DNA from: Octopus sinensis
Taxonomy: Eukaryota
Length of the DNA stretch: 64,000 nt
Assembly: GCF_006345805.1 (NCBI RefSeq)
Contig: NC_043017.1
Location: forward strand, 32,612,001 to 32,676,000
Reading direction: 5' to 3'
Shown here: positions 27,516 to 29,299 of the stretch, piece by piece
Layout: each line of letters begins with the position of its first letter
Numbering within the stretch: position 1 is the first letter of the stretch
Notes under the pieces: model-generated
The model's database searches: none
Seen by the model: only the letters and a program-made list of their open reading frames with translations
What the model was told of the DNA's origin: nothing
Made by a program: the position numbers and the translations under genes

Positions 27516-27764
27516 TATATATATATATATATATATATATTAATCAATATAGGGTGGTAAAAAAATTTTGTAGAATTTTTTTGCCACCAGCGTCCTAGTG
27601 GGAAAAAATTAAATAGTCATAGACCATTTTTAAGTTCAACATCACAATCAAGGAACGGCCATAATAGGCCATTCACCCACTAGAAATAACAGCCAAAAGC
27701 TTCAACCGCAAAATAACATCAATTCCGTAAACCAGGAGAAAATTAAAAAAACATTTACCCTGTA

Positions 27765-27871
27765 ATTTCTTATACGATGCACCGTTTCATCTACTGTTTA
27801 ATGGTAAACTAACCTGATTAAATTAAATCAAGCCAATCTACCATAGGCCCTTAGATTCATCAGTAAGAAAT
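27765..27871 (-). ncRNA. Type-I hammerhead ribozyme (copy 1)
   Basis: Reverse complement identical to 28442-28548; predicted cleavage between 27773 and 27772. Confidence 0.87.
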
Positions 27872-28441
27872 AGCCAAGTCGGAACAGATATTTTTCACGA
27901 GGCATTCCCGTCCCTGCCTCGGCAATATCTGACCTAAAATTTTCAAATCATCGCACTCGCGCCAAATTTATCGGCAGCAAATAAATATAAGCCGCCGATT
28001 CCATTACGGAATTAACCAGAAAATTCATAATTAATCAATATAGGGTGGCAAAAAAATTACAGGGTAAATGTTTTTTTAATTTTCTCCTGGTTTACAGAAT
28101 TGATGTTATTTTGCGGTTGAAGCTTTTGGCTGTTATTTCTAGTGGGTGAATGGCCTATTATGGCCGTTCCTTGATTGTGATGTTGAACTTAAAAATGGTC
28201 TATGACTATTTAATTTTTTCCCACTAGGCCGCTGGTGGCAAAAAAATTCTACAAAATTTTTTTGCCACCCTATATTGATTAATTATGAATTTTCTGGTTA
28301 ATTCTGTAATGGAATCGGTGGCTTATATTTATTTGCTGCCGATAAATTTGGCGCGAGTGCGATGATTTGAAAATTTTAGGTCAGATATTGCCGAGGCAGG
28401 GACGGGAATGCCTTGTGAAAAATATCTGTTCCGACTTGGCT

Positions 28442-28548
28442 ATTTCTTACTGATGAATCTAAGGGCCTATGGTAGATTGGCTTGATTTAATTTAATCAGG
28501 TTAGTTTACCATTAAACAGTAGATGAAACGGTGCATCGTATAAGAAAT
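28442..28548 (+). ncRNA. Type-I hammerhead ribozyme (copy 2)
   Basis: Stem I ATTTCTTA(28442-49)/TAAGAAAT(28541-48); core CTGATGA(28450-56); stem II ATCTA/TAGAT(28457-61/28520-24); GAAA(28525-28); stem III ACGG-TGCA-TCGT; GUA cleavage triplet ending at A28540. Confidence 0.88.
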
Positions 28549-29299
28549 TACAGGGTAATGTTTTTTTAATTTTCTCCTGGTTTACGGAATTGATGTTATT
28601 TTGCGGTTGAAGCTTTTGGCTGTTATTTCTAGTGGGTGAATGGCCTATTATGGCCGTTCCTTGATTGTGATGTTGATATATATATATATATATATATGGG
28701 CAATGGCTGATTCCGTAAAGACATATATATATACATATATCTACCTACCTATGTGTCTATCTGTCTGTCTATCTATCCATTTAACTGCCTCTTTCTCTCT
28801 CCCGAGTCCTCTTGCTATGTAAGAACAAACACCACACACACACACACACACACACAATGGGCTTCTGGAAAGTTTGCATCAACCAAATTCCACTCATGAG
28901 GCCAAAGATGCTAGAATAATGATGATGATGATGATGATGGTGATGAGGAAGACAAGAAGAAAATGTAAAATTAATTTTCTCCAATAGGAGAAAGAAAGGT
29001 GACGATGAGGGAAGAAGTAAAGTGAGGGTGGGGGCAGGGTGAATAAGAGAAGGGGGGGCGGGAAACATTGATAACAATGACAGCAACAACTGACTATGAC
29101 CATCATAATGATGATGATGATGATGATGATGATGGTGATGATGGTGGTGTCGAAGACGGAGCTGGTTAAATAAATGGATGGCCAAGAATGATGCCACTGA
29201 CATCTTGAAATGGCAACTGTTATCGAATTGAGAGCCAAAAATGGTAAATTCCTATTAGTATTCAAGAGGGAAAATCAACTTCACACGCATAATCGCACA

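What the first reader, a model, noticed from the sequence alone, without database searches (positions are those of the whole stretch)
27540..28676. Retrozyme-like element: 491-nt tandem unit carrying a complete type-I hammerhead ribozyme
Seen in sequence: a 491-bp period in both orientations. Each unit has an 8-bp stem I, CUGAUGA, a 5-bp stem II base, GAAA, a 4-bp stem III with palindromic UGCA loop and a GUA cleavage triplet. Stem I can extend past an asymmetric internal loop (CTTG/CAGG). The ribozyme is identical in both halves although about six substitutions lie elsewhere. The rest of the unit is rich in hairpins (GGTGGCAAAAAAATT/AATTTTTTTGCCACC, CTAGTGGG/CCCACTAG, CAGATATT/AATATCTG). There is no ORF, and both ends sit in (TA)n. 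Established: metazoan non-LTR retrozymes are tandem non-coding repeats with type-I hammerheads whose transcripts self-cleave into monomers and circularise. Inference: this is such an element, with a large monomer, in a probable cephalopod; I do not know whether it has been described.
Basis: partly seen in the sequence, partly recalled or inferred. Interest (0 to 1): 0.92.

Follow-up and report, generated by a model that had tools for sequence, protein, structure and literature searches.

The report
Octopus hammerhead-ribozyme retroelement insertion
A real but unusual hammerhead self-cleaving RNA motif sits in a 491-base non-coding unit that was pasted into a (TA)n microsatellite of an octopus genome as two head-to-head partial copies, which is the insertion pattern of Penelope-like retroelements, so this is a new example of a known kind of mobile element.

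Summary
The sequence features are real. A 490/491-nt non-coding unit carries a complete type-I hammerhead (HHR): 8-bp helix I, CUGAUGA, helix II, GAAA, 4-bp helix III with a UGCA loop, GUA, cleavage after A28540. Such a motif is expected about 0.005 times per 64 kb even under relaxed rules.

The locus is not a plain tandem array. It holds 1.06 units in minus orientation (27539-28058) joined head-to-head to 1.27 units in plus orientation (28051-28676), inside one (TA)n microsatellite. Each strand has only one complete ribozyme. This locus therefore cannot release a unit-length RNA by itself.

HHR, partial tandem, adjacent inverted 5'-truncated copy and (TA)n target together are the published hallmark of Penelope-like-element (PLE) integration. 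Non-LTR retrozymes are thought to be PLE-dependent. The host is an octopod.

The plus-orientated copy starts 2-10 nt after the ribozyme cleavage site. That hints that its template RNA had self-cleaved.

The HHR is atypical: a 68-nt helix II, A10.1-U11.1, and a helix III suited to dimers. Rfam misses it.

No other copies could be reached, so conservation, copy number and circular RNA remain untested.

Verdict: new member of a known kind, of moderate interest.

The parts
27516..27540 (.). Left part of the (TA)n microsatellite that received the insertion
   Evidence: TRF finds (TA)12.5 at 100%. The sequence was read directly.
27539..28058 (-). Minus-orientated copy, 520 nt (1.06 unit). In RNA sense it starts inside the 3' arm of the 15-bp hairpin, runs through the unit wrap point, and ends at unit position about 28283/28284, next to (TA)n.
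   Evidence: Inverted repeats I1 (319 nt, 97%) and I2 (233 nt, 98%). blastn gives 99.0% and 98.6%. Differences are listed.
27765..27871 (-). Complete hammerhead on the minus strand, identical to the plus-strand copy. The cleavage site lies between 27773 and 27772, read on the minus strand.
   Evidence: Descriptor hit on the minus strand at 27863/27788/27773 with helices of 8/5/4 bp. No mismatch to 28442-28548.
28051..28058 (.). Head-to-head junction with microhomology. AAATT (28054-28058) is shared perfectly by both copies, and AA.AAATT imperfectly.
   Evidence: Three-way comparison of the junction with the continuations of each copy.
28051..28676 (+). Plus-orientated copy, 626 nt (1.27 units). 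Its 5' end lies 2-10 nt downstream of the position equivalent to the ribozyme cleavage site (28049/28050). Its 3' end abuts (TA)n.
   Evidence: Direct repeat D1 at 490-nt spacing, 99%. blastn. Junction analysis.
28435..28554 (+). Type-I hammerhead with extended helix I. Helix I is 28442-28449 / 28541-28548, plus CUUG 28435-28438 / CAGG 28551-28554. The core is CUGAUGA 28450-28456. Helix II spans 28457-28524: 5 bp, tandem A.G/G.A, 1 bp, a 4x4 internal loop, a 19-bp stem and a 6-nt loop. GAAA is 28525-28528. Helix III is 28528-28539 with loop UGCA. Cleavage follows A28540.
   Evidence: Pair list and constrained fold at -37.0 against an MFE of -38.9 kcal/mol. Descriptor hit.
28234..28269 (+). 15-bp perfect hairpin GGTGGCAAAAAAATT / AATTTTTTTGCCACC, the strongest local structure of the unit. 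The minus-orientated copy (also at 27553-27588) is 5'-truncated inside its 3' arm.
   Evidence: D4; fold. There is a weak, sub-threshold mir-5728-like match of 26 bits.
28676..28697 (.). Right part of the (TA)n microsatellite

Best explanation
This is a single, fairly young insertion of a non-autonomous, hammerhead-bearing retroelement with a 490/491-nt unit. The unit is a retrozyme-type or PLE-derived element. It landed in a (TA)n microsatellite of an octopod genome and was put there by the machinery of a Penelope-like element (PLE).

Inferred life cycle:
1. Master loci elsewhere in the genome carry two or more units head to tail and are transcribed.
2. The type-I hammerhead cuts the multimeric RNA after GUA. 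It probably acts as a double hammerhead, because its own helix III is weak while two copies can form a 12-bp intermolecular helix III.
3. The resulting linear oligomers or ligated circles serve as templates.
4. A PLE GIY-YIG endonuclease/RT cuts the AT-rich target and extends both DNA strands from internal sites of the RNA.
5. The two cDNAs (1.27 and 1.06 units) meet head-to-head and are joined at an AAATT microhomology.

The plus-orientated cDNA ran to within 2-10 nt of the ribozyme's 5' cleavage product. This suggests its template was a self-cleaved oligomer.

The resulting locus is dead on arrival as a source of circles, with one cleavage site per strand. It has since decayed mainly at CpG sites.

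Shown directly: the motif, the architecture, the target, the lack of coding capacity and the RNA foldability. Inferred: transcription, cleavage, the template form, the PLE partner and the order of events.
For: - The HHR is complete and non-random.
- The unit wraps around in both copies, so the template was longer than one unit or circular.
- The copies are head-to-head with 5' truncations and different 3' end points, at unit positions about 28186 and about 28284. The whole element sits inside (TA)n.
- The literature lists the same features for PLEs: partial tandems, an adjacent inverted 5'-truncated copy, a (TA)n microsatellite bias, and HHRs in pLTRs (PMC8557442).
- A purified PLE protein cleaves and extends both strands, prefers AT-rich DNA and starts reverse transcription internally (PMC11167929).
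- Dual HHRs on opposite strands 100-700 bp apart were noted in Schistosoma (PMC4209133).
- Retrozymes are proposed to be PLE-dependent or PLE-derived (PMC7229834; bioRxiv 10.64898/2026.07.22.740005).
- The junction lies next to the cleavage-site equivalent. By my own arithmetic the chance of this is about 10/491, or 2%.
- The plus-strand monomer RNA folds to -154.6 kcal/mol (z = -7.9) with 26 G.U among 152 pairs. The complement folds to -101.9 (z = -5.0) with 4 G.U.
- Helix III scores -1.2 as a hairpin against -19.5 kcal/mol as an intermolecular duplex.
- GC is 35.9% and there is no ORF.
- The arms differ by 1.3%, mostly at CpG.
- The host is an octopod.
Against: - No second locus of the family was found. 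There is none in the window, and only chance matches turned up in the metagenome, GTDB and viral collections. The element is therefore not yet shown to be repetitive or mobile.
- No PLE ORF is visible in the window (inspected by eye only).
- Rfam does not call the ribozyme.
- The 10.1-11.1 pair is A-U, not the highly conserved G-C. Helix II is 68 nt long, so the usual loop 1-loop 2 contacts are not evident and activity is uncertain.
- An alternative pairing of the CUGAUGA core with the 3' strand of helix III is 1.9 kcal/mol more stable in the nearest-neighbour model.
- The coincidence of junction and cleavage site is a single observation.
- The 97-nt offset between the two 3' ends exceeds the 30-40-nt 'tail' described for PLEs.
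Confidence: 0.68

Rival explanations
1. This is a fragment of an ordinary hammerhead-bearing satellite or tandem array that was rearranged at the DNA level. An inverted duplication or fork template switch at the 15-bp palindromic hairpin produced the head-to-head structure. No retrotransposition created this arrangement.
For: The breakpoint of the minus-orientated copy lies inside the 3' arm of the strongest hairpin, and the junction uses 5-nt microhomology. Both are typical of replication-based rearrangements. Only this one locus is known.
Against: The whole element is bounded on both sides by one (TA)n tract, as expected for an insertion. The two arms end at different unit positions directly against (TA)n. 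The combination matches the published PLE insertion pattern. No remnant of a longer array exists nearby.
Confidence: 0.15
2. This is a piece of an autonomous Penelope-like element. The pseudo-LTR was left behind after an internal deletion or heavy 5' truncation. It does not belong to an independent short retrozyme family that makes 491-nt circles.
For: PLE pLTRs carry HHRs, and most genomic PLE-type HHRs are isolated motifs from truncated PLEs (PMC4209133). Retrozyme consensus sequences in Xenopus are related to the pLTRs of PLEs.
Against: Both copies cross the same wrap point with a 490/491-nt period and no coding sequence. The copied template was therefore a closed or tandem 491-nt unit, not pLTR-ORF-pLTR. 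Helix III is complete here, whereas metazoan PLE HHRs are usually minimal variants lacking it.
Confidence: 0.1
3. This is a foldback or MITE-like DNA transposon with long inverted arms and a TA target. The hammerhead-like motif is incidental.
For: The arms are about 520 bp long, inverted and 98.7% identical, with TA-rich flanks.
Against: The arms are not terminal inverted repeats. The left end (TTAATCAATATAGGG) and the right end (…GTGATGTTGA) are not complementary. The right arm runs 103 nt further, as a circular permutation of the same unit. The hammerhead is expected 0.005 times per window by chance.
Confidence: 0.04
4. This is an assembly artefact: a chimeric or foldback long read that created a false inverted duplication.
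For: Inverted PLE insertions are known to trouble assemblies (PMC8557442).
Against: The arms differ at 6 substitutions and 1 indel, and have different end points. The structure is embedded in unique flanks in the middle of the window.
Confidence: 0.03

Closest known systems
Metazoan non-LTR retrozymes (Cervera & de la Peña 2020, PMC7229834; Li, Clavereau & Pollet 2026 preprint)
   Same: It has a type-I hammerhead in a short, non-coding, AT-rich unit whose RNA is highly self-paired. More than one unit was copied, with a wrap-around. It has no LTR, PBS or PPT. The unit length is within the reported 51-972 bp. PLEs are the suspected mobilisers.
   Different: At this locus there is no head-to-tail pair of ribozymes, only 1.27 units, plus an inverted 1.06-unit copy. 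Helix II is 68 nt instead of about 4 bp plus a loop. The 10.1-11.1 pair is A-U. No loop 1-loop 2 contacts are recognisable. Circular RNA and copy number are untested. In the papers searched here, no retrozyme family has been described for cephalopods.
Penelope-like element insertions and their HHRs (Cervera & de la Peña 2014, PMC4209133; Craig et al. 2021, PMC8557442; PMC11167929)
   Same: It shows a partial tandem, an adjacent inverted 5'-truncated copy and a (TA)n microsatellite target. The HHR has a longer than usual helix II and a palindromic helix III/loop 3 suited to dimeric cleavage. There are two HHRs on opposite strands a few hundred bp apart.
   Different: There is no RT/GIY-YIG ORF. 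Helix III is complete (4 bp plus a tetraloop), unlike the minimal PLE variants. [quoted passage not shown] The offset between the two 3' ends is 97 nt rather than a 30-40-nt tail.
Newt/salamander satellite 2 and Schistosoma Sm-alpha hammerheads (classical type-I HHRs acting as dimers)
   Same: It has type-I topology, a weak helix III capped by a palindromic tetraloop that can form an extended intermolecular helix III, and a residence in repeats of a few hundred bp.
   Different: Those have a short helix II with conserved loop-loop contacts and occur in long arrays that Rfam Hammerhead_1 recognises. This one scores below threshold.
Rfam Hammerhead_1 hits in cephalopod genomes (235 loci reported in the giant squid genome, PMC6962438)
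   Same: These show that hammerhead motifs are already known to exist in cephalopod genomes.
   Different: Those loci pass the Rfam model. The motif here does not, so it would be absent from such automated counts.

Membership tests
Hammerhead ribozyme, type I | Conserved catalytic core: C3 U4 G5 A6 N7 G8 A9, G12 A13 A14, the A15.1-U16.1 pair, and H17 at the cleavage site | tested here: met
   CUGAUGA 28450-28456, GAAA 28525-28528, A28528-U28539 and A28540. The same is found on the minus strand.
Hammerhead ribozyme, type I | Three helices around the core, with helix I open and helices II and III closed | tested here: met
   The helices are 8, 5 (plus extension) and 4 bp. The constrained fold is -37.0 kcal/mol, within 1.9 of the MFE. 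Chance expectation is 0.005 per window.
Hammerhead ribozyme, type I | G10.1-C11.1 pair at the base of helix II, which is highly conserved in natural HHRs | tested here: not met
   A28457-U28524 occupies 10.1-11.1. G-C conservation is stated in PMC4209133.
Hammerhead ribozyme, type I | Tertiary contacts between loop 1 (or a helix I bulge) and loop 2 | tested here: inconclusive
   There are internal loops about 8 bp from the core in both helix I (GCU/UA) and helix II (GCCU/UAAA). No tool here can score such contacts.
Hammerhead ribozyme, type I | Score at or above the Rfam gathering threshold for a hammerhead model | tested here: not met
   There is no hit at the gathering score or at E<=10 on 1.6 kb. 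On 141 nt the best is Hammerhead_3 at 12.4 bits against a gathering score of 48.5, with a 56-nt insertion in helix II.
Hammerhead ribozyme, type I | Site-specific self-cleavage | not testable with these tools
   This needs in vitro transcription or RNA end mapping. The only indirect hint is that the plus copy's 5' end lies 2-10 nt from the cleavage-site equivalent.
Metazoan non-LTR retrozyme | Head-to-tail tandem repeats with at least two hammerheads on the same strand | tested here: not met
   This locus has 1.27 units on plus and 1.06 units on minus, with one complete HHR per strand. The wrap-around does show that the template was longer than one unit.
Metazoan non-LTR retrozyme | Non-coding unit of low GC (<45-50%), without LTR, PBS or PPT | tested here: met
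   The longest ORF is 34 aa and the longest stop-free stretch is 60 aa. GC is 35.9%.
Metazoan non-LTR retrozyme | Monomer RNA predicted to be highly self-paired | tested here: met
   The MFE is -154.6 kcal/mol against -114.4 +/- 5.1 for shuffles, z = -7.9, with 62% of bases paired.
Metazoan non-LTR retrozyme | Many genomic copies, and expression as linear and circular RNA of unit length | not testable with these tools
   No cephalopod genome or transcriptome can be searched by DNA here. Indirect attempts failed.
Penelope-like element type insertion | Partial tandem (pseudo-LTR-like) with an adjacent inverted 5'-truncated copy | tested here: met
   compared with the description in PMC8557442.
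Penelope-like element type insertion | Insertion into a microsatellite, (TA)n, or AT-rich target | tested here: met
   (TA)12.5 lies on the left and (TA)11 on the right. See PMC8557442 and PMC11167929.
Penelope-like element type insertion | RT plus GIY-YIG endonuclease ORF (autonomous element) | tested here: not met
   The element has no ORF. The only RT in the window (4767-6098) is RVT_1 plus a PHD-like finger with no GIY-YIG hit, and lies 21 kb away. Other stop-free stretches were inspected by eye only.

The most novel reading that the evidence does not exclude
The unit represents an undescribed cephalopod retrozyme family. Its hammerhead has a 68-nt helix II and an A10.1-U11.1 pair, so standard models miss it. 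This insertion would preserve a genomic footprint of in vivo self-cleavage: the cDNA ends at the ribozyme's 5' product, coupled to PLE-type priming on both DNA strands. If that pattern recurs across copies, it would directly link hammerhead cleavage to the PLE integration mechanism. Current in vitro work with a PLE found no need for cleavage (PMC11167929). In addition, read-through transcripts of such head-to-head insertions would fold into about 420-bp perfect RNA hairpins. These could be substrates for small-RNA pathways or for the A-to-I editing that is known, from general knowledge, to be extensive in octopus.
Probability: 0.15. Interest if true: 0.6.

Novelty: new member of a known kind. 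Interest (0 to 1): 0.35.

Why it matters
- It adds an octopod example to the hammerhead-bearing, PLE-dependent non-autonomous retroelements. No retrozyme family has been described for cephalopods in the papers I could search.
- It shows that a bona fide hammerhead core can escape the Rfam models because of a long helix II. Automated counts, such as the 235 hits in the giant squid genome, may therefore underestimate these elements.
- The fine structure of the insertion gives a testable prediction for how such elements integrate. That structure comprises two cDNAs primed from a (TA)n break, joined at microhomology, with one ending at the ribozyme cleavage site.
- Otherwise it is an ordinary, non-functional copy of a mobile element in a repeat-rich intergenic region.

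Tried and rejected
- Rfam was searched at the gathering score on the whole window, at E<=10 on 1.6 kb, and at E<=10 on 141 nt. No usable hammerhead call resulted.
- blastn of the unit against the window found no other copy.
- Exact and gapped pattern scans covered viral contigs, metagenome contigs and GTDB genomes. They gave only chance matches in GC-rich bacterial or phage DNA.
- I hoped that gene callers had translated other copies in public assemblies. A search with the 60-aa stop-free peptide found no candidates.
- Exact-protein look-ups of three window ORFs, meant to find the source assembly or an empty-site allele, found nothing on record.
- A 20.9-kb piece of O. vulgaris chromosome OX597814.1 shares dispersed repeats with the window but holds no copy of the unit.
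- A minimal-HHR descriptor (short helix II, with or without helix III) found no other hammerhead in the window.
- Rejected: 'conserved ribozyme versus mutated remainder' as evidence of selection (P about 0.2).
- Rejected: the foldback/MITE reading, because the ends are not complementary.
- Rejected: a ribozyme in the opposite polarity, as in viroid-like RNA replication. No motif was found on the complementary polarity of the unit.
- The paper by Lünse, Weinberg and Breaker (2017) on dimeric PLE hammerheads is not held in the library.
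Full report
**1. What is there**

Reading 27300-28900 and the repeat analysis show an 1138-bp element, 27539-28676. It lies between two runs of (TA)n, 27516-27540 and 28676-28697. It is built from one 490/491-nt unit, but it is not a simple tandem.

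- The left 520 nt (27539-28058) are the unit in minus orientation, 1.06 units.
- The right 626 nt (28051-28676) are the unit in plus orientation, 1.27 units.
- The two parts meet head-to-head at 28051-28058.
- Both parts cross the same wrap point of the unit. The copied template was therefore longer than one unit, or circular.
- The parts differ at six substitutions and one 1-nt indel (about 1.3%). Four of the substitutions are CpG to TpG/CpA.
- No other copy exists in the 64-kb window.

**2. The ribozyme**

| Element | Coordinates | Notes |
|---|---|---|
| Helix I | 28442-28449 / 28541-28548 | 8 bp; extended by CUUG 28435-28438 / CAGG 28551-28554 across a GCU/UA internal loop |
| Core, 5' part | 28450-28456 | CUGAUGA |
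| Helix II | 28457-28524 | see below |
| Core, 3' part | 28525-28528 | GAAA |
| Helix III | 28528-28531 / 28536-28539 | A-U, C-G, G-C, G.U; UGCA loop |
| Cleavage | after A28540 | GUA triplet |

- The identical motif lies on the minus strand at 27871-27765.
- A hammerhead descriptor was run on both strands. At relaxed settings it gives 0.005 hits per simulated 64-kb window, and a stricter setting gives none in 200 simulations. The real window gives exactly these two hits. The motif is real.
- It is atypical in three ways:
  - The 10.1-11.1 pair is A-U. G-C is highly conserved in natural hammerheads (PMC4209133).
  - Helix II is 68 nt: 5 bp, tandem A.G/G.A, 1 bp, a 4x4 internal loop, a 19-bp stem and a 6-nt loop.
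  - The usual loop-loop contacts are not evident.
- Because of the long helix II, Rfam does not call it. There is nothing at the gathering score or at E<=10 on 1.6 kb. On 141 nt alone there are only 12.4 bits to Hammerhead_3, against a gathering score of 48.5.
- Helix III is weak as a hairpin (-1.2 kcal/mol). Two copies can form a 12-bp intermolecular helix (-19.5 kcal/mol). This is the arrangement by which newt, PLE and many metazoan type-I hammerheads cleave as dimers (PMC4209133; PMC7229834).
- In the nearest-neighbour model, a pairing of the core with the 3' strand of helix III competes with the active fold, and is 1.9 kcal/mol more stable.

**3. The rest of the unit**

- There is no ORF above 34 aa, and no stop-free stretch above 60 aa.
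- GC is 35.9%.
- The monomer RNA in ribozyme polarity folds to -154.6 kcal/mol, against -114.4 +/- 5.1 for dinucleotide shuffles (z = -7.9). It has 26 G.U among 152 pairs.
- The complement folds to -101.9 kcal/mol (z = -5.0) with 4 G.U.
- Much of the strand difference is compositional, because the plus strand is G+U-rich. The structure is nonetheless clearly stronger in the ribozyme polarity.
- No ribozyme is seen in the other polarity. Viroid-like RNA-to-RNA replication is therefore not suggested.

**4. Host and context**

- The window is a repeat-rich eukaryotic region with microsatellites, a 63-nt minisatellite and SINE-like repeats.
- A LINE-type RT ORF at 4767-6098 is 83-85% identical to proteins of Octopus bimaculoides and O. 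vulgaris.
- A 20.9-kb piece of O. vulgaris chromosome OX597814.1 shares the window's dispersed repeats at 78-95%.
It is an octopod.

**5. What the architecture means**

The published hallmarks of Penelope-like element (PLE) insertions are:

- partial tandems that form pseudo-LTRs;
- often an inverted 5'-truncated copy immediately adjacent;
- a bias for microsatellite targets such as (TA)n;
- hammerheads in the pseudo-LTRs (PMC8557442).

A purified PLE protein cleaves and extends both strands of an AT-rich target, and it starts reverse transcription at internal sites of the RNA (PMC11167929). Pairs of hammerheads on opposite strands 100-700 bp apart were noted in Schistosoma (PMC4209133). Metazoan non-LTR retrozymes are proposed to be mobilised by, or derived from, PLEs (PMC7229834; bioRxiv 10.64898/2026.07.22.740005).

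The locus fits this pattern point by point. I therefore read it as one PLE-type integration of a 491-nt hammerhead unit:

- Two cDNAs were primed from the two sides of a break in (TA)n.
- They ended at different internal positions of the RNA (unit positions about 28186 and about 28284).
- They were joined at an AAATT microhomology.

**6. A detail worth following**

- The plus-orientated copy matches the unit perfectly from 28054, and with one mismatch from 28051.
- The position equivalent to the ribozyme cleavage site is 28049/28050.
- Its 5' end therefore lies 2-10 nt from the 5' end that self-cleavage would create. For a random breakpoint this has a chance of roughly 10/491, or 2% (my arithmetic).
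- The copy is 1.27 units long and contains an uncut site. Its template would then have been a partly processed oligomer with a self-cleaved 5' end.
- The minus-orientated copy is truncated inside the 3' arm of the strongest hairpin (28234-28269), a plausible stalling or template-switch point.
- This is a single observation and only suggestive.

**7.

- The unit looks like a retrozyme-type element.
- This locus has one cleavage site per strand. It cannot release unit-length RNA or circles, so it is a product of the family and not a source.
- The 'ribozyme identical although six substitutions lie elsewhere' argument carries no weight. The chance that none of 7 differences fall in 107 of 520 positions is about 0.2.
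- The monomer size is within the published range of 51-972 bp.
- Hammerhead motifs as such are already reported in a cephalopod genome: 235 Rfam hits in the giant squid (PMC6962438). I found no description of a cephalopod retrozyme.

**8. Limits**

- I could not reach any other copy. Pattern scans of viral, metagenome and GTDB collections gave only chance matches.
- A peptide trick and exact-protein look-ups also failed.
- Copy number, covariation, the autonomous partner, transcription, cleavage and circularisation therefore remain untested.
- Rivals were weighed. They are DNA-level inverted duplication of a satellite fragment, a remnant of an autonomous PLE, a foldback transposon and an assembly artefact. 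All are less likely, for the reasons given under each.

**9. Verdict**

This is a real, atypical hammerhead in a retrozyme-like unit, inserted PLE-fashion into (TA)n of an octopus genome. It is a new member of a known kind. Interest is moderate (0.35). It would rise if the junction-at-cleavage-site pattern recurs across the family.

Noticed in passing
window 4767-6098 (-), stop-free 4770-6179: A 443-aa ORF has an RVT_1 domain (E 9e-27) followed by a sub-threshold PHD/C1-like zinc finger. It is a LINE-type reverse transcriptase, 83-85% identical to Octopus bimaculoides and O. vulgaris proteins. Relatives at 50-59% occur in cnidarians, bivalves and amphioxus. It is not a Penelope-like element (no GIY-YIG hit).
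   Followed up: partly
window 37963-39445; also 4309-4501, 13172-13317, 47137-47341: A 63-nt minisatellite (23.5 copies at 95% in the largest array) is attached to a repeated head sequence that translates as MLAWVGRFNWGL...FLQLDALPNANHSESVVG. The head recurs at least seven times in the window on both strands. It is apparently a SINE-like element with an expandable internal minisatellite.
   Followed up: no
window 39712-42125, 60850-62182, 8074-8543, 29375-29692, 7367-7657: There are very long simple repeats: a (TG)n of about 2.4 kb, a (TACA)n of about 1.3 kb, two (ATAG)n arrays and an (AT)n array. The microsatellite load is extreme. That gives microsatellite-targeting elements many landing sites.
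   Followed up: no
window 1198-1641, 15328-15695, 48169-48503: Three loci hold two tandem copies each (periods 217, 184 and 172 nt; 82-87% identity) of what looks like the same dispersed repeat (…CTATTTCTTTACTGCCCACAAGGGGCTAAACACAGA…). This could be another element that inserts as partial tandems.
   Followed up: no
window 48684-49052 (-): A 122-aa ORF (…ILWDFMIQCDHEIENRKPNMVLIEKESKQCWIIDIACPADNKV…) has no Pfam hit. From memory, it resembles the C-terminal nuclease-like region of some LINE families.
   Followed up: partly
window 27539-28676: A transcript reading through the whole head-to-head insertion would fold into a hairpin with about 417 intramolecular pairs (-844 kcal/mol). That is a long double-stranded RNA.
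   Followed up: partly
window 28451-28455 with 28534-28538: The ribozyme core UGAUG can pair with CAUCG of the 3' strand of helix III. This gives an inactive conformer that the energy model prefers by 1.9 kcal/mol. It could act as a switch that protects monomers or circles from re-cleavage.
   Followed up: no
window 28234-28269 and 27553-27588: A 15-bp perfect A/U-rich hairpin gives a weak, sub-threshold match to the mir-5728 precursor model (26 bits, E 0.027, gathering score 100). This is probably only a generic hairpin resemblance.
   Followed up: no
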